Below are positions 1,060 through 57,749 of a stretch of 64,000 bases of DNA, one piece after another. The notes beneath the pieces are model-generated. The model saw nothing but the letters and a program-made list of their open reading frames with translations, was not told the origin of the DNA and ran no database searches. A program made the position numbers and the translations under genes. The stretch's first letter is position 1; the number at the start of each line of letters is the position of its first letter. The DNA is taken from assembly GCA_026770705.1 (NCBI GenBank), contig JANJGN010000150.1, forward strand, positions 372,001 to 436,000, written 5' to 3'. This DNA comes from Isurus oxyrinchus. Taxonomy: Eukaryota.

Positions 1060-1245
1060 NNNNNNNNNNNNNNNNNNNNNNNNNNNNNNNNNNNNNNNNN
1101 NNNNNNNNNNNNNNNNNNNNNNNNNNNNNNNNNNNNNNNNNNNNNNNNNNNNNNNNNNNNNNNNNNNNNNNNNNNNNNNNNNNNNNNNNNNNNNNNNNNN
1201 NNNNNNNNNNNNNNNNNNNNNNNNNNNNNNNNNNNNNNNNNNNNN
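1060..1245. other. Assembly gap (N run)
   Basis: Run of N characters. Confidence 0.99.
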
Positions 1246-1507
1246 GTGAGTGTGTGTCTGTCTATGTACCCTTGTGAGTGAGTGTGTGTGTGTGTGTACA
1301 TGTGTGCGTGTGGATTGTTGCATCTTTATTATTAACGTTATTTAAAAATAGTGATCACACAAGCCTGGTTTCTAAGGAAATGAAACTGCAAACAATTTAC
1401 AGTAAAATGAAACATACAGGAATAATCTATTTATTTTGAGCTGATGATATATAATTATACATGAGGCATGTTGCTAATTTCAAATGTCATCTGAAATATG
1501 GCAGGTC

Positions 1508-1795
1508 TGACAGAGCAGCATTCCCTCAGTGCCCATCCTCTGACAGTGCAGCACTCCCTCAGCATTGACCCTTTGAGAGTGCAGCACTCCTTCAGTATTG
1601 ACCCTCTGGAAGTGCAGCACTCCCTCAGCACTGACCCTCTGGGAGTGCAGCTCTCCCTCAGTACCGACCCTCTGGAAGTGCAGCACTCCCTCAGTGCTAA
1701 CCCTCCAACAGTGCAGCACTCTCTCAGTACTGACCCTCTGACAGTGCAGCACTCCCTCAGTACTGACCCTCCAACAGTGCAGCACTCCCTCACTG
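1508..1795 (-). repeat. 33-bp minisatellite (AGTGCAGCACTCCCTCAGTACTGACCCTCTGAC) within a Deu-SINE fragment
   Basis: About 9 tandem 33-bp units; source of the 11-aa RECCTVGGSVL / QHSLSTDPLTV pseudo-ORFs. Confidence 0.9.
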
Positions 1796-1860
1796 GGAAG
1801 AGTCCGTCCGCATTTTAAGCTGAAACCTTGAGACGGTCTCAAAATCCCAACCTTCCATCT

Positions 1861-2513
1861 CAGAGAGAGAGAGTGCGTTTATGTGAGAGAGAGAGACAAT
1901 GTATGTGTGAGAGACTGAGAGTGTGTATGTGTGAGAGAGCAAAAGAGAGGTAGAGTGTGTGTGCATGAGAGAGGGAGGTAGCTTGTGTGTGTGAGAGAGA
2001 GAGTGTGTGTGAGAGAAAGAGAACGTCTGTGAGAGTGAGAGAGAATTTATGTGTGAGAGAGAAAGATAGAGAGAATGTGCGTGTGAGATAGTGTGTGTGC
2101 AAAAGAGAGTGTGTGTCTGTGAGAGAGTGTTTGTGTATGTGAGAGTGTGTGTGTGAGATCGTGTGTGTGTGTGTGTTTGAGAAAGAGGGTGTGTGTGTTT
2201 GAGAGAGGGAGTGTGCGAGAAAGAGATGGTGTGAGTGTTTGAGGGAGGGGGAGATTGTGTGTTTGAGACAGGGAGTGAGAGAGAACATGTGTGTGAGAGA
2301 GAGAGTGTGTGTGTATGTGTGTGTGTGAAAGAGAAAGTGTTTGTGCAAAACAGTGTGTGTTTGAGAGTATGTGTGCATGTGTGAGTGTGTGTGTGTGTGT
2401 GCTAATGTTTGTGTCTGTGTGTGTGTGAGGGTTTGTGTGTGAGTGAGTTTGTGCGTTTGTGTGCATGTGTGTGTGCATGTGTGTGCGTGAAAGAGTGTTT
2501 GTGCAAAAGAGTG
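1861..2513. repeat. Compound (GA)n/(GT)n microsatellite
   Basis: Degenerate GA/GT dinucleotide tract running into the N gap. Confidence 0.95.
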
Positions 2514-6119: not shown

Positions 6120-6520
6120 CCCTCAGCATCCACCCTGTCAAACCCCCCACCACCTCAGAATCTTATATGTTTCAATAAGATCACCTCTCATTCTTCTAAA
6201 CTCCAATGGATACAGGGCCCAACCTGCTCAACATTTCCTCATAAGACAAACCCCCTTCATCCCAGGAATCAGCCCAGTGATCCTCCTCTGAACTGCCTCC
6301 AATGCAGAGTCTATCCCTCCCTAAGTAAGGAGACCAGAACTGTACACACTGCTCCTGATACAATCTCACCAACGCCCTGTACAGTTGTAGCAAGACTTCC
6401 CTCCTTTTATACTCCATCCCTTTGCAATAAAGGCCAACATTCCACTTGCCTTCCTCATTCCGTGGTGTTCCTGAATGCTGACTTTCTGTGATTCATGTAC
6501 AAGGACACCCAGATCCCTCT
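6120..6520 (-). mobile_element. CR1 LINE 3' fragment
   Basis: ORF 6196-6417 EYKRREVLLQLYRALVR..QFWSPY is the CR1 ORF2 C-terminal motif. Confidence 0.85.
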
Positions 6521-6600
6521 GTACCGCATTCTGCTGACTCTCTCCATTGAAGTAATATTCTGCTTTTTGATGTCCTGTCTCTTCCCTTGTTGCCTTTCAG

Positions 6601-6888
6601 GAGTGACGTCAGAGGGATGGTCTATGAAGGCGCTGCCTCGGAGGGCCATCAGCAGCTCTTGTGTGGTTATTCCGTGTAGCTTTGACTTTCCTTCCCACTC
6701 TTACACAGCACTGCACGGAGCTTGGTATAAATATTGGTATAGATGGAAATATACCATCACATACACCAAAGATCCCAATTATGGGGTGGCCACATTCGTG
6801 GGACGTGCTAAAATAATCGGCGACTTGGAAGGGAAGAATTGTTCGGTGAGGATTGATAGTCTCAGAGCTGAAGACAGTGACGTGTATT
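6601..6888 (+). pseudogene. Truncated Siglec-type Ig V-set exon (GVTSEGWSMKALPRRAISSSCVVIPCSFDFP...GRAKIIGDLEGKNCSVRIDSLRAEDSDVY)
   Basis: Acceptor CTTTCAG|6601; Siglec V hallmarks W on A strand, SCVxIPC, GxW, GDL..NCS, D.SD.Y; breaks into Gypsy gag at ~6889, stop at 6900-6902, no donor. Confidence 0.85.
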
Positions 6889-7289
6889 GCACCCAATTCT
6901 AAATCTTTTCACCAATTAGTCGTCCTCATGAAGATGTGTTTTCAGCTGAAGCCGTGGGTAATAATGCAGAGGTTTAAGTTTAACTCCAGAGTAAGGGCCC
7001 AGGGAGAGTCCATCGCAACCTATACAGTGAAGTGGAAGCAGGTGACTGAGCACTGGGACCTCGGAGACACACTCAATGACATGTTGCGGGGCCGATTGGT
7101 TTGTGTCGTTCACCCCAACGCCATTCAGAGCCGTTTACTCGCAGAAGCCGACATCGATTTGAAGCGCACCATGGAAATAGCGCCAGGCATGGAAAGTGCT
7201 GGGAGAGACTGGCGGGATTTACAGGATGTACAACATGGCACCAGTCCTCAGCTGGGACAGGAACCAACCACCGGGCGTGAGGCTCAAAC

Positions 7290-11790: not shown

Positions 11791-12175
11791 AACTTACCTG
11801 TCAGAAGCCAGTTTATGTTGATGTGAGTCTGAGTCGATGACTGAACCCAGTTGGTAACTTGTTCCATACAAAGCAAGAACGTTCATGCCCTTCAATGTTC
11901 CTGGATAAACCATGAACAAAGCTGGTGACAGACAGTCTCCACATGGTAAACACTGACCGATCAACACATGACATGGCTGTTAACCCCTAAACCTCAGCGT
12001 AAATCAGTTCCCCCTCGAGGCCCCTTGTCCGAAATAAAAGCAACGCACACAATTTGTAAAATAGTAAGTGTCTGGCAGGAAGGAGGAGCAATGAGAGGAG
12101 TAAGGGGTTAGGGGGCGTGCGCTTCACCTGATTTGCCGACATAAGAACCAGCCCCTCTGTTTTTGCTATGTTGTG

Positions 12176-12390
12176 TTGCGTCAATATGAACACATATTTG
12201 CACAAGGTGAAGGGCGTTGCGGAGGGACTGATAGTTCTCGGCGCCAGACAGTCAATGTCCCAGTGACCTTACTGCTGGTCCCAGGCCAGTGGGACAGGGA
12301 ACATCGACACTGCAATATCCAGAAATGGGTGTGATACCACACAGCTACCCACCCGCGGCTGTCCCCTTCAAGTGTTTCAGGTATAAGAGC
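12176..12390 (+). promoter_or_regulatory. Hepcidin-like proximal promoter: C/EBP-ATF-like TTGCGTCA (12176), C/EBP TTGCACAA (12198), BMP-RE GGCGCC+AGAC (12240-12249), TGACCTT (12264), TATA box TATAAGA (12382)
   Basis: Motifs read directly, located 70-280 nt upstream of ATG 12459; same classes of elements known in vertebrate HAMP promoters. Confidence 0.65.
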
Positions 12391-12458
12391 AGGAAGCTCC
12401 TCTAGTTACAAACCAAAGCATCAAAGCAGAGCCAGAAGATCAGAAGAGACAGGCAGAG

Positions 12459-12550
12459 ATGGGAAGCTCCCAGATGAAATGGCGACTTGTCTTGTTCACT
12501 CTGACTTTGCTGCTCTCCCTGCAGCTGAGTCACTTCTTCTCCTTGTCGAG
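12459..12550 (+). CDS. HAMP: Hepcidin-like exon 1, signal peptide MGSSQMKWRLVLFTLTLLLSLQLSHF.. (donor GAG|GTTAAG; 92 nt, out of phase with exon 2 by 1 nt)
   Basis: ATG 77 nt after TATA; classic n-h-c signal peptide; the donor is phase 0 only in the alternative frame ...SLLLLVE. Confidence 0.75.
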
Positions 12551-12754
12551 GTTAAGCTAAGAGATGTCCCTCTGGGTGAGGTGTTTCTTGCACATGACTA
12601 TACGTCTACCACCCAGATAGACTGGTCTCTTCCGCAGTTTGATATTATTATGTTCGTGCCTTTAATATTGTCGCCCTCTATGAATTTAACATCATTTCCT
12701 TCTGTCGTTTCCCCTGAAATTCTCATTCTTGTTTTCAATCCCTCCTCAGCGACT

Positions 12755-14160
12755 CCCTATCTCTGTAACCTCCTCCAGCCCGTACAACCCTCCCTATCTC
12801 TGTAACCTCCTCCAGCCCCTACAACCCTCCCTATCTCTGTAACCTCCTCCAGCCCCTACAACCCTCCCTATCTCTGTAACCTCCTCCAGCCCCTACACCC
12901 CTCCCTATCTCTGTAACCTCCTCCAGCCCCTACAACCCTCCCTATCTCTGTAACGTCCACCAGGCCTTACAACCCTCCCTATCTCTGTAACCTCCTCCAG
13001 CCCCTACACCCCTCCCTATCTCTGTAACCTCCTCCAGCCGCTACAACCCTCCCTATCTCTGTAACTTCCTCCAGCCCCTACAACCCTCCCTATCTCTGTA
13101 ACCTCCTCCAGCCCGTACAACCCTCCCTATCTCTGTAACCTCCTCCAGCCCCTACAACCCTCCCTATCTCTGTAACCTCCTCCAGCCCCTACAACCCTCC
13201 CTATCTCTGTAACATCCTCCAGCCCCTACAACAATCCCTATCTCTGTAACATCCTACAGTCTCTACAACCCTCCCTATCTCTGTAACCTCCTCCAGTCCC
13301 TATAACCCTCCCTATCTCTGTAACCTCCTCCAGACCCGACAACCCTCCCTATCTATGTAACCTCCTACAGTCCCCACAACACTCCCTATCTCTGTAACCT
13401 CCCCCAGGCCCCACAACCCTCACGATCACTGTAACCTCCTCCAGACCCTACAACCCTCCCTATCTCTGCAAACTGCTCCAGACCCTACAACCCTCCCTAT
13501 CTCTGTAACCTGCTCCAGACACTACAACCCTCCCTATCTCTGTAACCTGCTCCAGACCCTACAACCCTCCCTATCTCTGTAAAATCCTCCAGGCCCCACA
13601 ACCCTCACAATCACTGTAACCTCCTCCAGCCCCTACAATCCTCCTGAACTCTATAAGCTCCTCTCCACACTATAACTCTCCCTATCTCTGTAACCTACTG
13701 TGGCCCCTACAGCAGTGTCTATTTTGGTAACCTCCTCCAGCCTCTACAACCCTCCCTACATCTGTAACCTCCTCCAGCCCCCACAACCACCCCATCTCTG
13801 TAACCTCCTACAGCCCCTACACACCTCCCTACCTCTGTAACCTCCTCCAGCCCCCACAACTCCCCCATCTCTGTAACCTCCTACAGCCTCTACAACCCTC
13901 CCTATCTCTGTAACTTCCTACAGCCCTTACAACCCTCCCTATCTCTGTAACCTCCTACAGCCTCTACAGCCCTCCCTATTTCTGTAACCTCCTCCAGCCC
14001 CTACAACCCTCCCTATCTCTGTAACCTCCTACAGCCTCTACAACCCTCTCTATCTCTGTAACTTCCTACAGCCCTTACAACCCTCCCTTTCTCTGTAACC
14101 TCCTACAGCCTCTACAGCCCTCCCTATCTCTGTAACCTCCTCCAGCCCCCACAACCCTAC
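12755..14160 (+). repeat. 37-bp minisatellite (CTCTGTAACCTCCTCCAGCCCCTACAACCCTCCCTAT), ~38 copies, in hepcidin intron 1
   Basis: Tandem units read directly; the unit is a piece of the L2 3' region. Confidence 0.95.
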
Positions 14161-14199
14161 CTAAATCACTGGTCTGAGTCTCACTCCAGGGAATTCAGT

Positions 14200-14782
14200 C
14201 CCATAATGTAGATCAACGCTCCGTGCTGAGGGAGTGCTGCACTCTCAGAGGGTCAGTAGTGTGGAAGTGTGCACTATTGGAGGGACAGTACTGAGGGAGT
14301 GCTATACTGTCGGAGGTCAGTACTGAGGGAGTGCTGCTGTGTCGAAGGGTTAGTACTGAAATAGAGCTGCACTGACGGAGGGACAGTACTGAGGGAGCGC
14401 AGCACTATCGAAGGGTTAATACTAAGGGAGTGCTGCAGTGTCAAAGGGTTAGTACTGAGGGAGCGCAACAATGTTGAATGAGACATTAAACTGAGTCCCC
14501 CGTCTGCCCTCTCGGGCGGGTGTGAAAGATCCCACAGCCACTATTTGGAGGAAGAGCAGGGGGTGTTCTCCCCGGTGTCCTGGGACCAATATTTATCCCT
14601 CACCCAACATCACCAAAAACAGATGATCTAGGCCATGATCACATTGCTATTTGTGGGATCTTGCTGTGCACAAATCAGCTGCCACATTTCCTACAGTGTG
14701 AGTGCACTTCAAAAACATCCTTCAGTGGCTGTGAAATGCTTTGGGATGTGGTGAAAGGCGTTAGAGAAATGCAAGTCTGTCT
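14200..14782 (+). mobile_element. Deu-domain SINE with internal 33-bp tandem amplification
   Basis: 33-bp units followed by TGAGACATTAAACTGAG..AAAGATCCCACAGCCACTATTT..GAAAGGCGTTAGAGAAATGCAAGTC tail. Confidence 0.85.
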
Positions 14783-14877
14783 TCCTCCCTCTCTCTCTCC
14801 TGTACCTCTCTCTCTCTCTCTCCCTCTCCCTCAATCCTCCTCTCACTTTCTCCCTGATAAATTCTTTCTTTTTGCAG

Positions 14878-14934
14878 GTTGACACTGCTTTAGGTTCTTC
14901 GACGATTGAGAAATCTGTGGATTCCCCGGACACG
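14878..14934 (+). CDS. HAMP: Hepcidin-like exon 2, propeptide VDTALGSSTIEKSVDSPDT (57 nt, phase 0-0)
   Basis: Long polypyrimidine tract and TTTGCAG acceptor, donor ACG|GTAGGT; size and phase match the HAMP middle exon; in frame with exon 3. Confidence 0.8.
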
Positions 14935-16208
14935 GTAGGTGGAAATTCATTCCTTATTTTAAGGTTTCTCCCTGCTCGTTTCTTCCACAGAAAGTTTTCT
15001 GATTTCAAGCTGATTTCAGTGGCAGTCTGTCTCGGTTATACTCAGGAGGCATGTTTGAAATCGAGCCCCCCCCGCCCCCACTTTTTTTGCAAAGCTGGGA
15101 AGAGGCAATTCCAAGGAAGTGAAAATATCCCCACAGGAATTTTAAATGTAACCCACGCCGGGAATAGTGAGAGGGAGACTGATCCAGCCTGGGAGTGGGT
15201 TAAAGAGAGGCTGGGAGTCGAGAGTCGGAGAGAGGGATGGAATGGGGGAGGGAGGGATTGGAAGAGAGAGACAGAGAGTGGGATGGGGAGGGGTGAAAGG
15301 GAAAGAACATAGGTGGGAGAGAGTGACAGAGGGAGAAATTAAAGAAGAGATGCAGAGTGAGGGAAAGTGAAAAGGGAAGAGAGATTGTCCAAGAGAGAGA
15401 AATTAACAGGAAAGGGAGAGTTACAGAGTGAGCGAAAGGTACAAAAATAGTGTGAGAGAGAGGGAGAGATACAGAGTGAGAGAATGAGACAGGGAGAGAG
15501 AGGGAGAGAGACAGGAAAAGGGAGAGAGGAGAGAAAGATTGGGAGAGAGGGCAATTGAGAGGAAGAGTAGGAGAGAGAGAGACAGGGAGAGGAGGAGTGG
15601 ATGAGAGGAAGAGAGATAGAGATATGGAGCAGGAGAACACCTCCTCCGGTCCCGATGTTCCTCCAAAATCTCTGAAATTCCTGCATCTCCCGGGTCCCCC
15701 TGATTCCCATCGCTCCACCATTGGTGGCCGTGCCTTCAGCTGCCTGGGGCCCTGAGCTCCGGAATACCCTCCCTTAACCTCTCTGCCTCTCTCTCTCTCT
15801 CTCCTTTAAGACGCTCCTTAAAAACTGACATCTTTGACCAAGCTTTTGGTCACCTATCCCTAATATCTCCATATGTGACTCAGTGTTAGACTTCTCTCTG
15901 ATTTACGCTCCGGTAATGTGGGCTGGGACATTTTGCAATGTCAGAGGCGCTGTGTAAATGCAAGTTGTGAGTGTTATGTGGAAGGGAGACCCCAGGCGGC
16001 AGTCAGTGCCAGAGACTGGAGTCATTGTGCGCAGACCATATCTAATCTCTCCGAATGCACAATCGGTTTGACTGTCAGCCAAAGCACTTTTGATATTTGA
16101 TCCTTCTAACTGTTTATAACCAGGCCTACATCATACACCGTGAGGCTGGTTAATCAACAGACACCTTAGAGGATCGAGTGAAAGACAAAGAGGACTTGCA
16201 TTTCTCTA

Positions 16209-16357
16209 TAAAAACAAAGAAAACTGCGGATGCTGGAAATCCAAAACAAAAACAGAATTACCTGAAAAAACTCAGCAGGTCTGGCAGCATCGGCAGAGAA
16301 GAAAAGAGTTGACGTTTCGAGTCCTCAGAAGGGTCATGAGGACTCGAAACGTCAACT
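16209..16357 (+). mobile_element. Penelope-derived short palindromic element with 14-bp target-site duplication
   Basis: CTTGCATTTCTCTA duplicated at 16195-16208 and 16358-16371; internal inverted repeat AAGAGTTGACGTTTCGAGTCCTCA / TGAGGACTCGAAACGTCAACTCTT. Confidence 0.75.
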
Positions 16358-16609
16358 CTTGCATTTCTCTAGCGCCTTCCAACACATCAGGACGTCCCAA
16401 ACTGTTTCGCAGACAATCAAGTGCTTTTTTTCTTTCATGTGAGGTCACTGATGTACTGTGGGAAAAGAATCAGCCATTGGCGCACTGTAAGATCCCACAG
16501 ACAGCAGCATGATAATGACCAGCGCGCTCCCAGTACTTGCACTGCAAGTGTCAGTTCAGGGTGTGTGCTCGATTCTCTGCAACTCTCAGCTCTGAGTTAA
16601 AAGGACCAC

Positions 16610-17245
16610 CAGGCGTAATTGAGAAATTACCGAGCTGTCGGAGGGTCAGTACCGGCGGGGGGGCAGGACAGTCGGAGGGTCAGTACTGAGGGGGTGCTGC
16701 ATTGTCAGACGGTCAGTCTTGGAGTGCTGCACTGTCAGAGGGTCAGTCCCGGCGGGGGACTGCACAGTCGGAGGGTCAGTACTGAGGGGGTGCTGCATTG
16801 TCAGACGGTCAGTACTGAGGGAGTGCTGCACAGTCGGAGGGTCAGTACTGAGGGGGTGCTGCACTGTTGAAGGCGCTGTCTTTCAGATGAGATGTTAAAC
16901 TGAGACAACATCTGCCCTCTCAGATGGATGTAGAGGATTCCATGGCCACAATTTAGATGAAGTGCGTCAGGAGTTGGGGGGTATGTGTGGAGGGGATGGT
17001 GGGGGCTGGATGGGGTGGAGTTATGTCCACTTTCCTGGGGCAAACATTTATCCCTCAACTGACATTGGTAAAAAACTGAAAATCGGGGCCATTATCACAT
17101 TTCTGTTTGTGGGATCTTGCTGTGCGTGAATTGCCTGCTGCGTTTCCTACATTACAGCGGTGAGCTCACTTCAGAAAAAGTCCTTCCTTCAGCTGTGGAA
17201 CACTTTGGGCCATCCTGAGGAGGGGAAAGGCGCTAGAGAAATGCG
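16610..17245 (+). mobile_element. Deu-domain SINE with 33-bp tandem array, hepcidin intron 2
   Basis: 33-bp units then GCTGTCTTTCAGATGAGATGTTAAACTGAG...TTGTGGGATCTTGCTGTGCG. Confidence 0.85.
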
Positions 17246-17333
17246 CCATCCTCCTTCCAATGACGCGCCTGATTGAAATGATGCCTTCTTTCTTTCCGGA
17301 ATGTTCTCACCTATTGTCCTCCTGCTTTTCCAG

Positions 17334-17450
17334 GGCTCCTTGCTGCAGCGCCAGAACAGAATGAGCAGACAGCAGCTCTGCAGATTCTGCTGTAACTGCT
17401 GTAATTGGAGAGAACCAAATGAGACTTGTGGTTTCTGCTGTAGATATTAG
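17334..17450 (+). CDS. HAMP: Hepcidin-like exon 3: GSLLQRQNR|MSRQQLCRFCCNCCNWREPNETCGFCCRY*
   Basis: Acceptor CTTTTCCAG; RxxR processing site followed by the hepcidin cysteine scaffold C-xx-CC-x-CC-loop-C-G-F-CC-R-Y; TAG 17448-17450. Confidence 0.93.
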   Translation, partial: GSLLQRQNRMSRQQLCRFCCNCCNWREPNETCGFCCRY

Positions 17451-17634
17451 ACCCTGGCCTCATTCACGCAAGGTCATCCTGCACCATGCCACAGCCTCTC
17501 CCCTCCTTATCTACTGCTTAGCAATCTATTTCACACAGGCCCTGTTCATTAATTCCAACTGAAACTTTACCTGCGTTTTACAGTGTGTTTATCCAGCTTC
17601 CCCTTAAATACATCGACACTATTCACCTCACGTG

Positions 17635-18025
17635 ACTGTGTTTGTGTCTGTCTTTATGAGCGTGTGTGTGTGACTGTCAATATGTGTGTGTCAATGTGAA
17701 TGTGTGTGATTGTGTCAGCGTGTGTGTGTGTATGTGTGACTGTCAGTGCGTGTCAATGTGAATGTGTGTGATTGTGTCAGCGTGTGTGTGTGTGTGTATG
17801 TGTGTGTGTGACTGTGTCAGTGTGTGTCAATGTGAATGAGTGAGTGTGTCAGTGTGTCTGTGTGGGTGTGTGTGACTGTGTCAGTGTGTGTCAATGTGAA
17901 TGAGTGAGTGTGTCAGTGTGTCTGTGTGGGTGTGTGTGACTGTGTCAGTGTGTGTCAATGTGAATGAGTGAGTGTGTCAGTGTGTCTGTGTGGGTGTGGG
18001 TGTGTGAGTGTGCAAGTGAATGTGT
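17635..18025. repeat. (GT)-rich compound microsatellite with ~64-bp repeats in putative HAMP 3' UTR
   Basis: Repeated TGTGTCAGTGTGTGTCAATGTGAATGAGTGAG blocks. Confidence 0.85.
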
Positions 18026-18223
18026 GAGGAATCTTATGACTAAGTCATTTGAATGGATGTTACTGGGGTTAATGATAGTTAAAATTCAGAGAGATGTAAA
18101 GCGGGCTCCTGATTTTGCTGCTTTATGCTCCCGGGCACAGATTCACCCCGACAATGTGTTCATGATTCACCATTATCTTGTCGGGACTTTAATTGTAAAT
18201 ATTGTGCTTTGTAAAAAAAAATG

Positions 18224-18229
18224 AATAAA
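18224..18229 (+). terminator. Candidate poly(A) signal AATAAA for hepcidin-like gene
   Basis: First AATAAA downstream of stop, followed by T/GT-rich sequence. Confidence 0.55.
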
Positions 18230-19864: not shown

Positions 19865-20945
19865 GATGTCACATCCAGTCGTGGACAATTAAACAACTCA
19901 CTGGAGGAGGAGGCTCCACAAATATCTCCATCCTCAATGATGGAGGAGCCCAGCACGCCAGTGCAAAAGACAAGACTGAAGCATGCGCAACAATCTTCAG
20001 CCAGAAGTGCTGAGTGGGTGATCCATCTCGGCCTCCTCCGGAGGTCCCCAGCATCAGAGATGCCAATCTTTAGCCAATTCGATTAATTCCACGTGATATC
20101 AAGAAAGGGCTGAAGGCACTGGATATTGTAAATGCTCCAGGCCCTGAAAATATTCTGGCAATAGTACTGAAGACTTGTGCTCCAGAACTTGCTGCGCCCC
20201 TAGCCAAGCTTTTCTGGAATTTTCTAGTACAGCTGCAACACTGGCAACTACCCGGCTATGGGGTACGTCCTGTACACAAAAAGCAGGACAAATCCAACCC
20301 AGCCAATTCCCCAGCAGTCTATTCTTGATCATTACTAAAGTGATGGAAGGGGTCATCAACAGCGCTTGCAAGCAGCACCTGCTTACCAAGAACCTGCTCA
20401 CTGACGCTCAGTTTGTGTTCCACCAGGATCATTCAGCTCCTGGCCTCATTACAGCCTTGGTTCAAACATGCACAAATGAGCTGAACTCCAGAGGTGAGAG
20501 GGACTGCCCTTGACATCAAGGCAGCATTTGACTGAGTGTGGCAAATCAAGGAGCCCGAGCAAAACTGGAGTCAATGGGAATCGGGGGAAAACTCTGTGCT
20601 GCTTGGAGTCATACCCAGCACAAAGGACGATGGTTGTGATTATTGGGGGTCAATCATCTCAGTTCCAGGACATCACTGCAGGAGTTGCTCAGGGTAGTGT
20701 CCTAGGCTCAAACATCTTCAACTGCTTCATCAATGTCCTTCCTTCCATCATAAGGTCAGAAGTGGGGATGTTTGCTGATGTTTGCACAATGTTCAGCATC
20801 ATTCATGGCTCCTCAGATACTGAAGCAAGTTATGTCCAAATGCAGCAAGACCTGGACAACATCCAGGCTTGGGCTGACAGGTGATAAGTAACATTCATGC
20901 CACACAAGTGCCAGGCAATGACCAGCTCCAACAAGAGAGAATCTC
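19865..20945 (+). mobile_element. CR1-clade LINE RT fragment (decayed)
   Basis: KVMEGVINS..HLLTKNLLTDAQF, AGVAQGSVLG..FNCFIN, MFADVCT (FADD), MQQDLDNIQAWADR. Confidence 0.85.
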
Positions 20946-22360: not shown

Positions 22361-23692
22361 ATGTTCTCAAAGGCAATTGGGGATGGGCAACAAATACTGG
22401 CCTAGCCAGTGACACCAACATCCCTGAAATGAATAAGAAAAAAATGTATCAATCAATTAAATTTATTGATTAATCGAATCGAAATTCCTCCAGCTGCCGT
22501 GGTGGGATTTGAACCCGTGCCTTCAAAGTATTCACCTGGGCCTCTGGATCACTGGCCTAGTGCCATTCCCATTGTGCGACTGTCTGTTATCATCATGGCT
22601 CTTTCACATCGATGTGGAAGTCCTGATAACAGAAGCATTGGACGAGGTACAGAAAGGTGACAAATCAGGAGCTCCATTGCTCAATATGAACGGATAATAA
22701 AGATAAATGAACATAAACCTTCCAGTCGCTAATTAGGGAGTCACTGTGGAGCCCATGAGTCCCTCGCAGCGCTATTGCAACCTTCTGGATTCCCAGTAGG
22801 GGACTCGGGGTGCAGCTGTGTCTTCCTCATCATTTGGAAAAGCCGGAATTGTTCGGGTGCCCCTTCAAACAGGCCGAAGATGCAGTGGGTGATGTCTCCC
22901 ACAGGCCCTGGGAGACCTCCCCTGCCAATTTGTTTTGTAGCTTATTCTTCAACTGCGACATTGGATCAGCTTGAAAAAGGGTGGGTCTGAGGCAATACCA
23001 CCAGGTAAGCGTCTATCCCCTCACACGTCACCCCCCCCCACCCCTGTAACCATCACAGTCCCTCCCATCGTGCTGGAGGAGCATAATGTGCACATTCCCC
23101 TCCTTCCAATCAGTCTCCTCCCTTCCTCTCTAATCCTTGATCTTATTGTGTTCGGGGTTGACATCCCAGTCCTCCTCCCTAGACTGTCTGATGTTGACAT
23201 CCCAATGCCCCATGTAGACCTGACCTCTCTCCAACTAGAGGCCCATTGTACTGTGACTTACAGAGACCACCGGCCCCCCTCGATTCCCACCCCCACCCCT
23301 ACCCTCTATATTACCTGCTCCCCACTGACAGGCTGCAGATGCCTCCCCTGACTGGGATTGTGCCACCTGCGGCCTAGTATCAAGCCACCCACTCCCAGGA
23401 TGGACGTGTGTGAGGGACTGACCACGTCACTCACACCATGCTGGGCACCACCAACCCAGGACTGCCAGGCTGTCCCCACCACACTGGACTGGGACTAGAA
23501 TAGGCGTGCCAAGCACAGCTCTCTAAATCGTGGCGCAGACCCACAGCACTCGCAATGTTTTGTGGCCCGAATCCTTGCTGAGGAACTGCCCAGCACTAAA
23601 AGCAAAAAAACTGCAGATGCTGGAAATCCAAAACAGAAACAGAAACAGAAATACGTGGAAAAACTCAGCAGGTCTGGCAGCATCGGCGGAGA

Positions 23693-24378
23693 AGTACTGA
23701 GGTAGTGCGGCACTGTCGGAGGGTATGAACTGAGGGAGTGCTGCACTGTCGGAGGGTATGAACTGAGGGAGAGCTACACTGTCGGAGGGCTTGAACTGAG
23801 GAAGTGCTGCACTGTCGGATGGTTTGAACTGAGGGAGTGCTGCACAGTCGGAGGGTTTGAACTGAGGGAGTGCGGCACTGTCGGAGGGTATGAACTGAGG
23901 GAGTGCTGCACTGTCGGAGGGTATGAACTGAGGGAGAGCTGCACTGTCGGAGGGCTTGAACTGAGGAAGTGCTGCACTGTCGGATGGTTTGAACTGAGGG
24001 AGTGCTGCACTGTCGGAGGGTCTGAACTGAAGGAGTGCTGCACTGTCGGAGGGTCTGAACTGAGGGAGTGCTGCACTGTCGGAGGGTCTGAAATGAGGGA
24101 GTGCTGCACTGTCAAAGGGTCTGAACTGAGAAAGTGCTGCACTGTCAGAGGGTCTGAACTGAGAGAGTGCTGCAATGTCAGAGGGTCTGAACTGAGGGAG
24201 TGCTGCACTGTCGGAGGTTCTGAACTGAGGGAGTGCTGCACTGTCGGAGGGTTTGAACTGAGGGAGTGCTGCACAGTCGGAGGGTCTGAACTGAGGGAGT
24301 GCTGCACTGTCAGAGGGTTTGAACTGAGGGAGTGCTGCATTGTCGGAGGGTCTGATCTGAGGGAGTGCTGCACTGTCT
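23693..24378 (+). repeat. 33-bp minisatellite variant (GGGTCTGAACTGAGGGAGTGCTGCACTGTCGGA), preceded by Penelope-type fragment 23597-23693
   Basis: About 21 units; source of the 292-aa DSAALPQFRPS pseudo-ORF. Confidence 0.93.
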
Positions 24379-25107
24379 AAAGAACATTGTACAAATTGCA
24401 CAAAATTTCATCTGATGCCTGTGTCTCATGCTAACATGAAGTTCATGCACACAACAGGAATATTTCTCGCTGTTTCTCTGCAGCAAGACAGCTTTGGAAT
24501 CACACCACCCACTGGCAAGAGTGTGCAGTTACAATGTGACATGTTTACATTGGAAATTTCTATTATAAAGATGGACAGAGGAATTCATCTGATTGGAAAA
24601 CGTGACAACAGGAAGCTATGTCTTTGAGCCAAGTATTTTGCAGCAAAACAAGAATTTTAATCTTTAAATATCTACAGAACAGGCTGAGCATTTTAATCAC
24701 TTGAGTTAATCAATGTAATTTTATTCATAAGCCAAATGCTTCTTACAATCTATCGCAGCATGAAAAGGTGCAGCATTCAGAAAGCACATTCCAATCAGAG
24801 AACAGAGTTTAGCAACGTCACATTTCTGTTCATTCCTATTCGATGAACTATTTCAAAAGGAAATTGGACGGAAATTGGAAATAAATTTGCAGGGATACGG
24901 GGATAGAGCAGGGGATGGGAGTGAGTGGATTGCTTTACAGAGAGACAGCATAGACTCAATGGGCCAAATGTCCTCCTCCATTGCTGGAATGACTCGATGA
25001 TACGGAGATGATTATAACCAGGACACTGACCAGTTTCATTACAACTTAACACAACATCACACGTTATTTGTCCGCACTGACTGACCAGATTGTTGCTGTA
25101 CAAAGCT

Positions 25108-25247: not shown

Positions 25248-26091
25248 CTAGAGAACACACAGAAAGAAATCATCACTGACTCTCCGCTTTCAATCTCTCA
25301 CTCTGGCTGAACAATCAAGCTTCATATCACTGCAACATTTGCTGTAATATTGACCCATCCACTGGGATTCAATGTGGAATGAATGTTTTCATTGTAAACA
25401 CTCTAAGAGTGGACAATCGGAACTTTCTCCTTAGCGTGGAACATTGGTGAGAATGGATCATTGTGCTGTTGGACTCCCTGTCCAATGTTTCTCTCCATCG
25501 CTGTGTACAGGATTGTGCTGTAGAAAATTCTGGAAACGTTTAGTGCCGGGTGAAAATCCATCTCAGCCGTGTGTGCGAATCGGGCAGTATCGGGATGGAC
25601 TCCCCCACGGACTTACACACCCCGCTTAATAAACAGTTCCAATCTTTACCCAGAGAGAGGGGAGAATGTGGAACTCGCTCCCACAGGGAATGGTTGAGGT
25701 GAATAGTAGGAAATTAGGAAGTGAAATTGCTTGAAAAGCTTGGAGATGCAAGGGTTAAGTGTTACCGTGCTACCACTGGTGGGAGAGTGTAACTACAGCG
25801 TGATGTTTACATAGGCAATCCCCATTATGAACATGGACATCATGTGAAAAATGGGCACTGGAAAGCTGAGAACTTGGAGGAGGTGTTGCCATGGAAAATA
25901 ATGTGTGTGAGATGTAAAGTTTAGACAGCTTGTCTCTTCATTCAGCAACAATCAAATAAAGATCAGTTAACTTCTATCGACTGTGAAGCACTTTGAGAGG
26001 CATGAGAATGTGGATACTGAGAACGGGCTGCACTGTCAGAGGGTCAGTGCTGAGGGAGTGCTGATGTAGAATGAAGGGTGTCCGTTCTTAC

Positions 26092-26388
26092 CTTGCACAG
26101 TTAGTACGAGGGTCCGCTCCGATGAAACAGATGGATATCTCACTCTGCAGCTGAGATTGTGTCTGTGGTGTTTGAGTGATGGGATCAGGGTCAGAACAGA
26201 AGTATAGGTCAGAGTGACATCATGCTGAGTTACAGTGTTTGAGACTGATCCAGGTACGTCAGTGGGAGTGTCCCAGGTTAAGACAGGTGCTGCTGTTCCA
26301 TTGCACGTTGTGTTGAAGGTGCAGCTTACATCCACACGCTTTCCTGCAATAATTTCAGCAGGGAATATCGTGGGTTTATCTGTGAAAT
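26092..26388 (-). CDS. Siglec-like Ig C2-set exon (copy D) DFTDKPTIFPAEIIAGKRVDVSCTFNTTCNGTAAPVLTW...LSCRVRYPSVSSERTLVLTVQ
   Basis: 297 nt phase 1-1, canonical AG/GT, Siglec domain-2 pattern C..C..P.LTW..LSC. Confidence 0.92.
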
Positions 26389-27116
26389 CTAACAGACAGA
26401 GAATGGATCCTTTTAGAGAAATATAACATGAAGCATCAGTTCAAATAGAAATCACAGTCCCACAAGAAAAAGCACTTTTACAAGGATGATATCAGATCTG
26501 AGAGGTTACAATGATTAGGAGAGAATTTCCTGCTTTGAGACTTTGGTGTTTCTGTCTCTCAGCTTAATACACGTTCACTCCGAGACACTTGAACTGATAA
26601 TAGTGGGTGAGGGTGGTGGAGCAGACCAGAGTTTGGAGTGCACTACCTCATCATTCACTCAGCGATCTGGGCCATTTGTTACTTTGCAATTTGTGGGAGC
26701 TTGCTGTGTGCAAATTGGTTGCTGTGTTTCCCACATTACAATAGTAACTACAATTCAGGAATCAGCTCATTGGCTGTGAAGTGATTTGGTCCATGCTGAG
26801 GTGGTGAAAGGTGCTACAGAAATGTGAATCTTTCTTCTGTCGCTAAGTCAGACTTCGAGACAGGATTAGAGAGATCGATAGGAGTGGATAACCTGATAAC
26901 ATTGATGGACACAGTCAATACATTTAATCATTGATATTAAAGTGAGTATTAGATGTTGCTTTAGGAGTGAACTGGAAGCTATCACCAGGTTATTGAGAAT
27001 CAGACAGTGTGTTATAATAAGCTGTGTTTTGTGTTAATACGTAAACGTCACAGTTTGTGTTATTTCCCATTGAGTGTTGAATGTGAATTGTTGAGTAATT
27101 ATAACACAACACTTAC

Positions 27117-27482
27117 CAGAAACGTGAAGCTGGGTTACAGGGTAATAGTTGTGGCTCGGACCATTGTCAAATTCTATTCTGAAAAAATAAGGTCCTGCAT
27201 CTTCCCGTGTGATGTTGTTTATAATCAGGGAACAGTCGCCATCTTTCAGGTCTCCAGACAGCCGGGTCCGATGGTGGAACCGTGGTAACTCGTGACTGTG
27301 ATCCTTGGAGTGAAAGGCTACAGACGATGTTCCCCGTTCCTCATTATTAAACCAGACTCCACCTCGCGGTTGGTTTTCCAGACACGATGGATAACTGTAG
27401 TGACATGGAATCTGTACACAGGAACCTTCCTGCGCTGTCACCTCTCGTGGACTGTCACCTTTCCACTCTTGTGACAGTCCAG
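27117..27482 (-). CDS. Siglec-like Ig V-set exon (copy D) with essential Arg (YFFRIEF)
   Basis: 366 nt phase 1-1, AQEGSCVQIPCHY, GDLKDGDCSLII, DAGPYFFRIE; canonical splice sites. Confidence 0.92.
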
Positions 27483-27589
27483 CTGGGGAGAGAAATCTCA
27501 ATATTTATCTCTGAATGATTTGTGGATCCACTGAACCCGATATTTACAGATGAGGCTGAATTGGGGGGATGGTCAATACTGAGGAGAAT

Positions 27590-30910: not shown

Positions 30911-31167
30911 GAGGGGTGGAAGGTGTAGTGGGGAGGAGACACTTCACTCAGTGGGGAGGTGTCATCACCCCTCAGCTCGGTTTACGTTACAGCTATGATG
31001 TGGATTCAATCACACACAATAAGCTCATGGATCTGGGAGCAGAAATAGACAAATCATTAAAAATAGTGACGCTGGTTAACACGGCCAAAAAACAAGCAAA
31101 TCAAACACTATTATTTCCCGTTGAGTGTTGGATGTGAATTGTTGAGTAATTATAACACAGCACTTAC

Positions 31168-31554
31168 CAGAAACGTGAAGCTGGGTTTCAGGATAGTTGC
31201 TGTAACTATTTTTGCCGTCAAATTCTATTCTGAAATAATAAGGTCCTGCATCTTCCCGTCTGATGTTGTTTATAATCAGGGAACAGTCGCCATCTTTCAG
31301 GTCTCCAGACAGCCGGGTCCGATGGCGGAACCGTGGTAACTCGTGACTGTGATTCTTGGAGTGAAAGGCAATGATCCCTCTAGACCTTGTATTCCATGTA
31401 TTCCATGTGTACCATTTCACATACCAGATTCCGACACGTGCTCTCCCTACTAAACGTGCTGGATAACTGTAATTACATGGGATCTGTACACACGAACCTT
31501 CCTGCGCTGTCACCTCTCGTGGAGTGTTGCCTTTCCACTCTTGTGACAGTCCAA
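31168..31554 (-). CDS. Siglec-like Ig V-set exon (copy C) with extended Trp-rich C-C' loop and essential Arg (YYFRIEF)
   Basis: 387 nt phase 1-1, open frame, canonical CCCCAG / GTAAGT sites. Confidence 0.88.
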
Positions 31555-32182
31555 CTGGGGAGAGAAATATCAATATTTAACTCTGTGTGTTTTGACGATC
31601 CACTAGACTCGATATCCACCCCCTCCTTCACTGGGGCACAGTGGCTGCAGTGTGGACCATCTACAGGACACACATGGAACTCCCCAAGGTATCACAATGG
31701 ATGGGAGAGAATCCTGGAAACAGGAGTGGACAAGTTCATTCTACATTGGCTGATGGTCCTCAGGACCCTGATTGTGCACAAGCCTGCTATCCAACAGAAC
31801 TGAAGTTGGGGAAAATCCATTTGGAATTCCATTGTCCAGGGCATTGTGTTAACTAGCTGGGTTTGTTTTAAATCTAAAATCTATTTTTGGTCTGTTGCCT
31901 TAAAGGGAGTGTAACTGGGAGTCAGATTAATTAGGAATTTTTGGAGTTATTATAGCTGTCATTGTAGTCTTATGTATGTGCTTGAAATCTTTTATTTTTG
32001 TGACAAATATTTTAATTTATTTTTTTAAATCTCTAAAGATCTTGGTGGACTTATTGCTTCTGAATTCAGTGCACACATCTCATAATAAATACAAATTGCA
32101 AATTCATTATGATCGTGTGACCACCTTTCTCTCAGGGACTTGGTCTGCCTGGGTCACATCACCTGCCAAGTGATAACACTGT

Positions 32183-42429: not shown

Positions 42430-43288
42430 CTAACAGACAGAGAATGGATCCTTTTAGAGAAATATAACGTGAAGCATCAGTTCAAATAGAAACCACAGTC
42501 CCACAAGAGAAAGCACTTTTACAAGGATGATATCAGAACTGAGAGGTTACAATGATCAGGAAAGATTTTCTTGCTCTTTGGCAGTAGTGTTTCTGTCTCT
42601 CAGCTTAATACACGTTCACTCTGAGACATGTGAATTGAGAACACTGGATGAGAGAAGAGGCTCAGACCAGAGATTGGAGTTAAAAGCAGAATACTGTGGA
42701 TGCTGGAAATCTGAAACCAAAACAAAAATTGCTGGAAAGACTCAGCAGGTCTGACAGTATCAGTGGAGAGGAAGACAGGGTTAACGTTTTGAGTCCGTAT
42801 GACTCTTCATCAGACCAGAGGTTTGAGTTCACTGGCTTCTCATTTCCTCAGTGATCTGGGTGATTTATTACATTGTGGTTTGCTGGATCTTGCTGTGCAC
42901 AAACTGCCTGCTGTGTTTTACATCTGTGACTACAATTCAGGAATAATTTCATTGGCTGTGAAGGGATTTGGATCCTCCTGAGGTGGTAAATTGCGCTGCA
43001 GAAATGCACATCTTTCTTTTATCGATACGTCAGACTTTTAAACAGGACAGGAGAGATTGATGGGAGTGGATAACCTGATAATACAGTTAATGCTTTTCAT
43101 CATTGATATTAAAGTGAGTATTAGATGTTGCTTTAGGACTAAACTGGAAGCCATCACCAGGTTATTGAGAATCAGACAATGTGTTAAAACAAGCTGTGTT
43201 TTGTGTTAATATGTAAACGTCACAGTTTGTGTTATTTCCCATTGAGTGTTGAATGTGAATTGTTGAGTAATTATAACACAGCACTTAC

Positions 43289-43657
43289 CAGAAACGTGAA
43301 GCTGGGTTACAGGGTAATAGTTATGGCTCGGACCATTGTCAAATTCTATTCTGAAAAAATAAGGTCCTGCATCTTCCCTTCTGATGTTGTTTATAATCAG
43401 GGAACAGTCGCCATCTTTCAGGTCTCCAGACAGCCGGGTCTGATGGCGGAACCGTGGTAACTCGAGACTGTGATCCTTGGAGTGAAAGGCTATGGGAGCC
43501 CAGGGAATCTGTTTCTCATTATTAAACCAGACTCCACCTCGTGGTTGATTTTCCAAATGTGCTGGATAACTGTAATGACATGGAATCTGTACACACGAAC
43601 CTTCCTGCGCTGTCACATCTCGTGGAGTGTCACCTTTCCACTCTTGTGACAGTCCAA
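43289..43657 (-). CDS. Siglec-like Ig V-set exon (copy B) with essential Arg
   Basis: 369 nt phase 1-1; GLSQEWKGDTPRDVTAQEGSCVQIPC...GDCSL...YFFRIEFDNGPSHNYYPVTQLHVS. Confidence 0.92.
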
Positions 43658-44519
43658 CTGGGGAGAGAAATATCAATATTTAACTCTGGATGGTTTGTAG
43701 ATCCACTAGACTCGATATCCACCCCCTCCATCACTGGGGCACATTGGCTGCAGTGTGGACCATCTACAGGACACACATGGAACTCCCCAGGGGTTTCATA
43801 ATGGATGGAAGAGAATCCTGGACACAGGAGTGGACAACTTCATTCTACATTGGCTCATGGTCCTCAGGACCCTGTTTAGTGAAGCCAGTCTTCCACCCAA
43901 CACAGTGTTTACAAGACACACAGGGAAACTGTGTAAACATCTCATCTCTCTAAACTGACTGGTTTGTCTTCGGTTTAACTTTCAGTTATTTTACTTCCTT
44001 ATTATGGTTGCTATGGTGAAACTGTGCAGGAAGTGCGAGGGCTGGACTCTCTGTCTATTCTCACTGCAGCTGTGATGTAGTCGTGGTGGTTTTCAGTAAA
44101 ATGAAACCCTCTGATCTCCTCCATCGCCGAGGTTTAGGGAGTGAATTCCAGAGCTCAGGCCCCAGGCAGCTGAAGGCCCGGCCGCCAGTATTGGAGTGAT
44201 GGGAATCGGGGGATGGTCAAGAGGCCGGAATTGGAGTAACACAGAGATCTGGGACGTTGGTTGGGAGAGTTGCAGGAGGTTACAGAGATAAGGAGGCAGT
44301 GTGAGGCAATGGATGCATTTGAACAAAGAGATGTGAATCTTAAGTTTGAGATGTTGTAGGACCAGGAGTCAGATAGTTTAGGGGTGATGGGTGAATGGGA
44401 CTTGGTGTGAGTTTGTACACTGGCTCACTGCTGAATCAGTTCCCAATCACAGCTCAATAAGAATGATCTTTTACAAAGACTATTCACCATAAATCTGTCT
44501 GAGCTGACGATGATATTAC

Positions 44520-57685: not shown

Positions 57686-57749
57686 GTAAACCGAACCCAT
57701 TGGTCAACTAAAATAGTGACAAGGGTTGAATAAACTGGTGATGAGGTGA

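What the first reader, a model, noticed from the sequence alone, without database searches (positions are those of the whole stretch)
12382..18229. Hidden three-exon hepcidin-like gene embedded in a Siglec cluster
Seen: TATA box, signal-peptide exon, 57-nt phase-0 propeptide exon and a last exon with RxxR followed by the 8-Cys C-xx-CC-x-CC...C-G-F-CC scaffold, then AATAAA. The ORF track does not recover the Cys-rich exon because the exons are short and the introns are swollen by minisatellites and SINEs. Known: HAMP has this three-exon layout and in mammals lies in USF2-HAMP-MAG-CD22. Inference: this is the cartilaginous-fish counterpart (or a local duplicate) of that locus, so the hepcidin-Siglec linkage would date to the jawed-vertebrate ancestor.
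Basis: partly seen in the sequence, partly recalled or inferred. Interest (0 to 1): 0.85.

Follow-up and report, generated by a model that had tools for sequence, protein, structure and literature searches.

The report
Frame-broken shark hepcidin gene copy
This is a real copy of the hepcidin gene (a small cysteine-rich iron and defence peptide) lying among Siglec immune-receptor genes in a shark genome, but its first exon is one base short, so as assembled it cannot make the peptide and is most likely a young dead duplicate.

Summary
TATAAG lies at 12382. A signal-peptide exon runs 12459-12550, a 57-nt exon 14878-14934, and a last exon 17334-17450. AATAAA lies at 18224.

The last exon passes Pfam's own Hepcidin threshold (32.5 bits against a cut-off of 27). 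All three exons are colinear with an annotated basking-shark hepcidin, XP_078389754.1 (31+19+38 aa), and with catshark hepcidins.

Exon 1 is 92 nt where relatives need 93, and the only usable GT donor leaves phase 2. The signal-peptide frame therefore stops in exon 2 (14891-14893) after 35 residues. A third ATG gives an 81-aa ORF without a proper leader.

All eight cysteines and the RxxR site survive, although 19 of 30 other exon-3 residues differ from the basking-shark protein. The break is therefore recent, an allele, or an assembly error.

Siglec-type V-set exons flank the gene on both sides, so the Siglec neighbourhood is confirmed. USF2, LSR and FFAR are not in the window, and MAG/CD22 orthology is unresolved.

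No RNA cover was seen in four runs. Earlier notes of this scan report many hepcidin copies in this genome, some of them expressed. Verdict: a new, probably dead member of a known family.

The parts
12382..12387 (+). TATA box (TATAAG), 72 nt before the first ATG
   Evidence: the only TATAWR in 11900-12460
12240..12250 (+). GGCGCC followed directly by AGACA (BMP/SMAD-element-like); weak, could be chance
   Evidence: about 0.14 GGCGCC expected by chance in the 560 nt scanned (my arithmetic)
12459..12550 (+). Exon 1 coding part: signal peptide, 30 codons plus 2 nt. It is 92 nt where relatives have 93 (31 codons ending ...FSLSK)
   Evidence: 29 of 30 residues identical to XP_078389754.1
12548..12556 (+). 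Lesion site and donor: TCG AG|GTTAAG. The only usable GT donor is in phase 2, and no GT lies at the in-frame position
   Evidence: all other GTs in exon 1 score below -2.7 bits; this one 2.6, against 7.7 for donor 2
12479..12481 (+). Third ATG, in the frame that does join exon 2. It opens an 81-aa ORF with a weak, acid-interrupted hydrophobic stretch
12551..14877 (+). Intron 1, mostly a 37-nt minisatellite (12753-14163) and a 33-nt repeat (14226-14463)
14878..14934 (+). Exon 2, 57 nt, pro-region VDTALGSSTIEKSVDSPDT, phase 0 at both ends by homology
   Evidence: 16 of 19 residues identical to XP_078389754.1
14891..14893 (+). Premature TAG met by the signal-peptide frame after 35 residues, 41 nt before the last exon junction
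14935..17333 (+). Intron 2, with purine-rich and 33-nt repeats and interspersed repeats
17334..17450 (+). Exon 3 coding part: end of the pro-region, RQNR/RMSR cleavage motifs, a 29-aa (or 26-aa) mature peptide with 8 Cys and an NET sequon, and TAG
   Evidence: (PF06446, 32.5 bits)
17451..18229 (+). 3'UTR with a GT-rich minisatellite (17662-18012), ending in AATAAA (18224-18229)
6492..6899 (+). Upstream Siglec-type V-set exon. It is cut short by a stop and has Gln where sialoadhesin has the sialic-acid-binding Arg, so it is probably a remnant
26039..27504 (-). Nearest downstream Siglec-like gene: V-set exon 27037-27504 (with the GPYFFRIEF arginine motif) and C2-set exon 26039-26440
20427..20532 (+). 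Reverse-transcriptase fragment with a CAG acceptor, counterpart of the third exon of LOC144671611 isoform X3
31607..31849 (+). Counterpart of the third exon of LOC144671611 isoform X1 (85% identical, two stops here). A second copy lies at 43710-43878. Both lie just upstream of, and antisense to, the neighbouring Siglec V-set exons

Best explanation
This is a duplicate of the shark long-loop hepcidin gene, sitting in a tandemly duplicated hepcidin-Siglec array, that has recently been disabled at the exon 1/intron 1 boundary. A working copy would act as follows (inferred from the family). Exon 1 gives a cleavable signal peptide. Exon 2 and the start of exon 3 give an acidic pro-region. A furin-type convertase cuts after RQNR, the position homologous to REKR/RQRR in relatives. 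This releases a 29-residue hairpin held by four disulfides. That peptide has an 8-residue loop with an N-glycosylation sequon (NET) and lacks the SHLS/DTHFP-type N-terminus. It therefore looks like a defence-type (HAMP2-like) hepcidin rather than the ferroportin-binding hormone. In this copy exon 1 is 92 nt instead of 93. The only GT donor splices the signal-peptide frame into a stop in exon 2 after 35 residues, so no hepcidin is made. The stop lies 41 nt before the last junction, so a transcript might escape nonsense-mediated decay. Shown here: family membership, exon colinearity, the frame defect and the Siglec neighbours. Inferred: processing, function and the timing of the inactivation.
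For: Pfam Hepcidin scores 32.5 bits against a cut-off of 27. It is the single such motif in the window. Exons 1, 2 and 3 align without gaps to XP_078389754.1 (Cetorhinus maximus). Exon 3 also aligns without gaps to XP_038670190.1 (Scyliorhinus canicula), and to XP_038669797.1 (S. canicula) with one 4-residue gap in the loop. All 8 Cys and R6, R9, M10, N24 and G33 of exon 3 are invariant. All three relatives end exon 1 with FSLSK (31 codons), while this copy has FSLS plus AG. No alternative in-frame donor exists. The premature stop is at 14891-14893. 19 of 30 non-Cys residues of exon 3 differ from the basking-shark protein, yet 8 of 8 Cys are kept. The chance of that under equal drift is about 3e-4, so the exon was under constraint for most of its history and the break is recent. 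The locus architecture matches LOC144671611, and the Siglec units are tandem copies.
Against: The lesion is a single base and I could not check it against reads. Reads were laid on putative RNA runs, which covered none of the three exons. Nothing else in the gene is decayed: promoter, splice sites, cysteines, stop and poly(A) signal are all intact. That fits an assembly error or a segregating null allele as well as a young pseudogene. The absence of RNA cover is uninformative, because the tissues of the runs are unknown and contigs drop rare transcripts.
Confidence: 0.6

Rival explanations
1. The gene is intact and working in the animal. The missing base is an assembly or base-call error, or one allele of a polymorphism, and the locus makes a secreted long-loop hepcidin like its paralogues.
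For: Every other feature is intact. The cysteine retention argues for long-standing constraint.
Against: The defect lies in a run of only two or three identical bases, not the long homopolymers where modern assemblies err (established knowledge of long-read errors). Donor 1 is also weak, with T at +3. Unchecked notes of this scan list several other hepcidin copies in this genome with lesions at the same boundary, which suggests real decay within the family. No exon cover was seen in four runs.
Confidence: 0.22
2. The 81-aa ORF from the third ATG (12479) is the real product, a leader-poor hepcidin isoform that acts inside the cell or is secreted unconventionally.
For: The ORF is open through all three exons and its ATG has G at -3 and +4.
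Against: Two upstream ATGs in another frame come first. The N-terminus has no basic n-region, and its best hydrophobic stretch is short and flanked by Glu: Kyte-Doolittle 1.9 over 12 residues, against 2.6 for the true leader. That frame is merely the shifted reading of a signal peptide that is 29/30 identical to relatives. An eight-cysteine peptide needs the secretory pathway to form its disulfides (established knowledge).
Confidence: 0.03
3. The locus now serves only as a promoter and first exons for chimeric or non-coding transcripts that splice to downstream TE-derived or Siglec-antisense exons, as in isoforms X1 and X3 of LOC144671611.
For: Counterparts of both alternative third exons lie downstream on the same strand with AG acceptors in phase 0.
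Against: The frame defect would break those products too. The 31607 copy has two stops and the 43710 copy a frameshift. No joint of this kind was reported.
Confidence: 0.08
4. It is a chance resemblance and not a gene.
For: None beyond the shortness of the exons.
Against: The Pfam score is above its cut-off. There is about 90% identity to an annotated hepcidin in exons 1 and 2, in the right order, phase and strand.
Confidence: 0.01

Closest known systems
Cetorhinus maximus LOC144671611 isoform X2, XP_078389754.1 (88 aa, Pfam Hepcidin)
   Same: Same three-exon partition (31+19+38 aa). The signal peptide is 29/30 identical and the pro-exon 16/19. Exon 3 aligns without gaps, with the same 8-residue loop length and 8 Cys. 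The same downstream alternative exons are present.
   Different: Only 50% identical in exon 3. The relative has REKR, an MSHLSVC N-terminus and a Lys-rich loop (KKGTKKT). This copy has RQNR, MSRQQLC and NWREPNET with a glycosylation sequon. This copy is one base short in exon 1.
Scyliorhinus canicula hepcidin-2-like XP_038670190.1 (88 aa, long loop) and XP_038669797.1 (84 aa, 4-residue loop); S. torazame hepcidin-1 XP_072325013.1
   Same: Exon 1 starts MGSSQMK and ends FSLSK. The cleavage site is RxxR|M and the cysteine scaffold is the same. The long-loop form is therefore shared by lamniform and carcharhiniform sharks.
   Different: 50-56% identity in exon 3. The 84-aa form has the usual short loop.
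Teleost hepcidins: HAMP1 (QSHLS N-terminus, iron hormone) and HAMP2 (defence type); bass hepcidin structure 1S6W
   Same: The core CRFCCNCC is identical to bass hepcidin. Shared features are three exons, a furin site, 8 Cys and multi-copy families (PMC8960508).
   Different: The loop is twice as long. There is no QSHLS/DTHFP motif, so it resembles HAMP2 in lacking the ferroportin-type end. No orthology to HAMP2 is implied.
Human HAMP in the USF2-HAMP-MAG-CD22-FFAR block at 19q13.12
   Same: Same exon plan (30/20/34 codons in human, from my own memory and not checked with a tool) and Siglec-family neighbours. HAMP, USF2 and the FFAR genes share a locus in mammals (PMC4453067); the adjacency of MAG and CD22 is my own knowledge.
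   Different: Here the neighbours are short, tandemly duplicated Siglec-like genes, and hepcidin itself is multi-copy. USF2, LSR and FFAR were not seen within 64 kb.

Membership tests
Hepcidin (Pfam PF06446) | Profile match above the curated gathering score | tested here: met
   32.5 bits against 27, E 1.1e-7, profile positions 24-52 of 53
Hepcidin (Pfam PF06446) | Eight cysteines in the C-x2-CC-x-CC...C-x2-CC order that forms the four-disulfide hairpin (PMC8960508) | tested here: met
   All 8 Cys align to three shark hepcidins and to bass hepcidin 1S6W. The loop is 8 residues instead of 4, as in two of the shark relatives.
Hepcidin (Pfam PF06446) | RX(K/R)R convertase site before the mature peptide (PMC8960508) | tested here: inconclusive
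   The P4 and P1 arginines are kept (RQNR, aligned to REKR/RQRR), but P2 is Asn. A second RxxR (RMSR) follows three residues later.
Hepcidin (Pfam PF06446) | Three exons with a signal peptide in exon 1, joined in frame (PMC8960508) | tested here: not met
   The layout and splice sites are present, but exon 1 is 92 nt, so the signal-peptide frame stops at 14891-14893. It is a member by descent, not a working member as assembled.
Hepcidin (Pfam PF06446) | Beta-hairpin fold | tested here: inconclusive
   The AlphaFold2 model of exon 3 from a 4-row alignment had mean pLDDT 59 and spurious helices. It was unusable and was not sent to a fold search.
Iron-hormone type hepcidin (mammalian HAMP / fish HAMP1) | N-terminal DTHFP or QSHLS motif tied to ferroportin internalisation (PMC8960508) | tested here: not met
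   The mature N-terminus is MSRQQLC, or QQLC if cut at RMSR. The basking-shark and catshark long-loop relatives do have MSHLS.
Iron-hormone type hepcidin (mammalian HAMP / fish HAMP1) | Liver expression induced by iron or inflammation | not testable with these tools
   Four putative RNA runs gave no cover of any exon, and their tissues are unknown.
USF2-HAMP-MAG-CD22 syntenic block | Siglec-family gene next to hepcidin | tested here: met
   V-set exons at 6492-6899 (+) and 27037-27504 (-) match sialoadhesin, Siglec-5 and MAG at E 1e-10 to 1e-13. Pfam Ig_CD22 is above cut-off for the four minus-strand V-set exons.
USF2-HAMP-MAG-CD22 syntenic block | USF2, LSR or FFAR genes, or Siglecs shown to be orthologues of MAG or CD22, on the flanks | tested here: not met
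   Apart from the hepcidin gene, the ORFs I examined in the window are Siglec-like Ig exons, reverse-transcriptase fragments or repeats. Solved-structure matches do not separate MAG from CD33-type Siglecs. The scaffold beyond the window could not be read.

The most novel reading that the evidence does not exclude
The one-base defect is an assembly error or a segregating null allele. In that case this copy belongs to a shark-specific, possibly N-glycosylated, long-loop hepcidin subfamily that has lost the ferroportin-type end and has been amplified together with Siglec receptor genes as a repeating innate-immune unit. The hepcidin-Siglec neighbourhood would then be an ancestral feature of jawed vertebrates that mammals keep as HAMP-MAG-CD22.
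Probability: 0.2. Interest if true: 0.55.

Novelty: new member of a known kind. Interest (0 to 1): 0.3.

Why it matters
On its own this copy is a minor item: one more, probably dead, member of the hepcidin family, and shark hepcidins are already in RefSeq.

It does add three things. First, it shows that automatic exon-joining of these short genes must be checked for phase. Second, it documents birth-and-death turnover in a hepcidin array interleaved with tandemly duplicated Siglec genes in a shark. Third, it gives one more data point that hepcidin and Siglec-family genes are neighbours outside mammals.

I found no paper holding all three terms 'hepcidin', 'Siglec' and 'synteny'. The open literature I could search says almost nothing on cartilaginous-fish hepcidins beyond a nurse-shark plasma proteome hit (PMC9207270). 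A proper chromosome-scale comparison could therefore be a small but new evolutionary result.

The mature peptide's lost SHLS end and acidic, sequon-bearing loop, set against the Lys-rich loop of relatives, make the family a natural test of which parts of hepcidin serve iron control and which serve defence.

Tried and rejected
1. RNA evidence. The one read-laying run used four putative RNA runs from four studies. Contigs lay only on intronic repeats. None covered exon 2 or exon 3. Only a faint depth in one run touched the bin that holds exon 1. No 12550/14878 or 14934/17334 joint appeared. This is uninformative, not evidence of silence.

2. phmmer of the 38-aa exon 3 against 1.84 billion representatives found no hit at E <= 0.001. 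That is expected for so short a query.

3. A word-indexed search with the open frame around exon 3 found no candidate. The blank means little, because bass-type hepcidins share CRFCCNCC with this exon.

I therefore could not align the lesion base by base, compute dN/dS, or read the scaffold flanks.

5. AlphaFold2 of exon 3 gave pLDDT 59 and was discarded without a fold search.

6. Alternative rescues of the frame were rejected. No other GT in exon 1 scores as a donor. No second AG lies near the exon 2 acceptor. Skipping exon 2 also gives a stop (and reading).

7. No tRNA-like SINE head was found in the introns.

8. Promoter motif scan: one GGCGCC plus AGACA at 12240, one C/EBP-like site at 12198, and no STAT site. 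This is too weak to use.

Exons were searched one by one by reference. Exons were joined only inside scripts, to count frames.

10. The search of earlier findings by sequence was blank.


Full report
**What is in the sequence**

- TATAAG lies at 12382-12387. It is the only TATA-like hexamer in the 560 nt before the coding start.
- An ATG at 12459 opens MGSSQMKWRLVLFTLTLLLSLQLSHFFSLS, a textbook signal peptide. Its best 12-residue Kyte-Doolittle mean is 2.6. It is followed at 12551 by GTTAAG.
- A 57-nt exon lies at 14878-14934, behind a polypyrimidine tract and CAG and before GTAGGT.
- A last exon starts at 17334, behind TTTTCCAG. It reads GSLLQRQNRMSRQQLCRFCCNCCNWREPNETCGFCCRY, then TAG.
- The first canonical AATAAA after the stop is at 18224.
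- The C-x2-CC-x-CC motif occurs once in all six frames of the 64 kb.
- Minisatellites make up most of intron 1: a 37-nt unit in 38 copies at 12753-14163, and a 33-nt unit at 14226-14463. They also fill parts of intron 2 (33-nt unit, 16635-16867) and the 3'UTR (GT-rich, 17662-18012).
- I could not confirm SINEs as such. ARAGORN finds no tRNA-like head. The enormous contig depth over 16130-16930 and 12730-14530 shows only that these are high-copy repeats.

**Is it hepcidin?**

Yes.

- Exon 3 alone scores 32.5 bits against Pfam Hepcidin (PF06446), above the curated cut-off of 27, with E 1.1e-7.
- Against solved structures its only match is bass hepcidin 1S6W, with an identical CRFCCNCC core.
- A search with the open frame around exon 1 found Cetorhinus maximus LOC144671611. 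Isoform X2 (XP_078389754.1, 88 aa, Pfam Hepcidin; accession) splits as 31+19+38 residues.
- Local tblastn places those three parts at 12459, 14878 and 17334 on the plus strand, in order.
- Exon 1 is 29/30 identical and exon 2 is 16/19 identical.
- Exon 3 is 50% identical with no gap. All eight cysteines and R6, R9, M10, N24 and G33 are invariant across this copy, the basking-shark protein and two catshark hepcidins, XP_038670190.1 and XP_038669797.1.
- The 8-residue loop is shared with the basking-shark protein and one catshark protein. It is therefore an old shark form, not a peculiarity of this copy. The other catshark protein has the usual 4-residue loop.

All three relatives end exon 1 with FSLSK, which is 31 codons or 93 nt. 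Here the exon reads ...TCG AG|GTTAAG, which is 92 nt.

The GT at 12551 is the only plausible donor. It scores 2.6 bits on a rough donor matrix, weakened by T at +3. Every other GT in the exon scores below -2.7.

With junction 12550/14878 the signal-peptide frame reads AG+G, then TTG ACA CTG CTT TAG. It stops at 14891-14893 after 35 residues. No second AG lies near the exon 2 acceptor, and skipping exon 2 also ends in a stop.

The frame that does run through all three exons starts at a third ATG (12479). It gives an 81-aa product beginning MATCLVHSDFAALPAAESLLLLVE. This has no basic n-region and only a short hydrophobic run bracketed by glutamates. It is simply the shifted reading of a conserved leader, and an eight-cysteine peptide needs the secretory pathway. 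I give this reading 3%.

Two routes to the present boundary are possible and I could not tell them apart without paralogue DNA:

- loss of one A from TCG AAG|GT;
- or, from TCG AAG|GTAAGC, a G-to-T change at intron +1 followed by an A-to-G change that made a new GT one base upstream. The two strings have the same length.

The second route was suggested by unchecked notes of this scan that other copies in this genome have a changed first intron base.

**How old is the break?**

Of the 30 non-cysteine residues of exon 3, 19 differ from the basking-shark protein, yet 8 of 8 cysteines are kept. If cysteines had drifted at the same rate, the chance of that is about 3e-4. The frame, stop, RxxR site, splice sites, TATA box and poly(A) signal are also intact.

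The exon was therefore under constraint for most of its divergence. The defect is young, or one allele, or an assembly error. I rate a real, recent inactivation at about 0.6 and an intact gene in the animal at about 0.2.

I could not check reads at the lesion. My single read-laying run went to four putative RNA runs. They covered only intronic repeats and showed no exon 2 or exon 3 cover and no exon-exon joint. That says nothing either way about expression.

**What a working copy would do (inferred from the family)**

The family features come from PMC8960508.

- The signal peptide is removed.
- A convertase cuts after RQNR, the position aligned to REKR/RQRR. This releases a 29-residue hairpin with four disulfides. 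A second RxxR (RMSR) could trim it to 26 residues.
- The peptide has net charge about +2 and a loop, NWREPNET, that carries an N-glycosylation sequon.
- Its N-terminus is MSRQQLC. The basking-shark and catshark long-loop relatives have MSHLS there, which resembles the QSHLS motif that marks iron-hormone HAMP1 in bony fish.

This copy thus resembles defence-type (HAMP2-like) hepcidins in lacking that motif. No function was tested.

**Surroundings**

The Siglec setting is confirmed.

- On the minus strand, V-set exons lie at 27037-27504, 31079-31576, 43209-43679 and 54756-55226. They carry the GPYFFRIEF or GPYYFRIEF arginine motif.
- They match Siglec-5, sialoadhesin, MAG, Siglec-8 and CD33 at about 1e-13. 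They pass Pfam V-set and Ig_CD22.
- C2-type exons follow each of three of the four V-set exons; none lies between the extra V exon at 31079-31576 and the one at 27037-27504.
- These units are 90-98% identical tandem copies.
- Upstream on the plus strand, 6492-6899 is another Siglec-type V-set exon (sialoadhesin 3e-10, MAG 1.5e-8). It is cut short by a stop and has Gln where sialoadhesin has the key Arg.
- Apart from the hepcidin gene itself, the other ORFs I examined are reverse-transcriptase fragments and repeats.
- No USF2, LSR or FFAR gene was seen.
- The solved-structure matches do not separate MAG or CD22 from CD33-type Siglecs. The few Ig exons per unit look unlike five-domain MAG or seven-domain CD22.

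The third exons of LOC144671611 isoforms X3 (a reverse-transcriptase fragment) and X1 recur here. They lie downstream on the same strand at 20427-20532, 31607-31849 and 43710-43878, with AG acceptors. The whole segment is therefore a paralogue of that locus, or its counterpart in a close relative. I cannot name the species. The closest proteins are from basking shark.

**Comparison with what is known**

Hepcidin genes of sharks are annotated in RefSeq, and a hepcidin was detected in nurse-shark plasma (PMC9207270).

Mammals have HAMP in one locus with USF2 and the FFAR genes (PMC4453067). The adjacency of MAG and CD22 is my own knowledge.

I found no paper that holds all three terms 'hepcidin', 'Siglec' and 'synteny'.

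Earlier notes of this scan, which are unchecked leads, report the following:

- many hepcidin copies in this genome, several strongly expressed;
- an intact copy 19 kb before this window;
- other copies with lesions at the same boundary.

One note on this same window saw the same frame defect, which I confirmed independently.

**Limits**

- AlphaFold2 of exon 3 was unusable.
Exons were handled one by one by reference and joined only inside scripts for frame counting.

**Verdict**

This is a genuine hepcidin-family gene copy in a shark hepcidin-Siglec array. As assembled, it is disabled by a one-base defect at the end of exon 1. It is a new member of a known kind, of modest interest by itself.

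Noticed in passing
window 20427-20532, 31607-31849, 43710-43878 (+): Counterparts of the alternative third exons of basking-shark LOC144671611 isoforms X3 (a reverse-transcriptase fragment) and X1. Those of X1 lie just upstream of, and antisense to, the neighbouring Siglec V-set exons. All have AG acceptors in phase 0. The 31607 copy has two stops and the 43710 copy a frameshift. RefSeq's 'isoforms' of that hepcidin gene are therefore read-through splices into neighbouring junk.
   Followed up: partly
window 25000-56000 (-): There are at least three tandem Siglec-like units, each with a V-set exon and C2-type exons, 90-98% identical to one another, at about 26-27 kb, 42-43 kb and 53-55 kb. An extra V-set exon lies at 31079-31576. 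All four V exons keep the sialic-acid-binding Arg motif (GPYFFRIEF / GPYYFRIEF).
   Followed up: partly
window 6492-6899 (+): This is a lone Siglec-type V-set exon upstream of hepcidin on the same strand. It is truncated by a stop and has Gln at the position of the essential Arg. No C2 exon follows before the hepcidin gene, so it is probably a remnant.
   Followed up: partly
window 1407-1891, 14226-14463, 16635-16867, 23540-24500, 45280-46600, 50400-50700, 56900-57700, 63390-63999: One 33-nt minisatellite family (unit about CTGAGGGAGTGCTGCACTGTCGGAGGGTCAGTA) recurs on both strands all over the window, including both hepcidin introns. It creates long spurious ORFs rich in 'VLRECCTVRGS'.
   Followed up: no
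window 12240-12250 (+): GGCGCC is followed directly by AGACA about 170 nt before the likely start site. This is reminiscent of the BMP-responsive element of mammalian HAMP promoters. A C/EBP-like TTGCACAA lies at 12198. Both could be chance.
   Followed up: no
window 1060-1245 and 2514-2736: Two runs of N (186 and 223 bases) lie inside a CA/TG-rich repeat region.
   Followed up: no
P0004 (XP_038669797.1) against P0003 (XP_038670190.1), Scyliorhinus canicula: The catshark has both a short-loop (4-residue) and a long-loop (8-residue) hepcidin on the same 165-Mb chromosome. The long-loop form therefore predates the split between lamniform and carcharhiniform sharks.
   Followed up: partly
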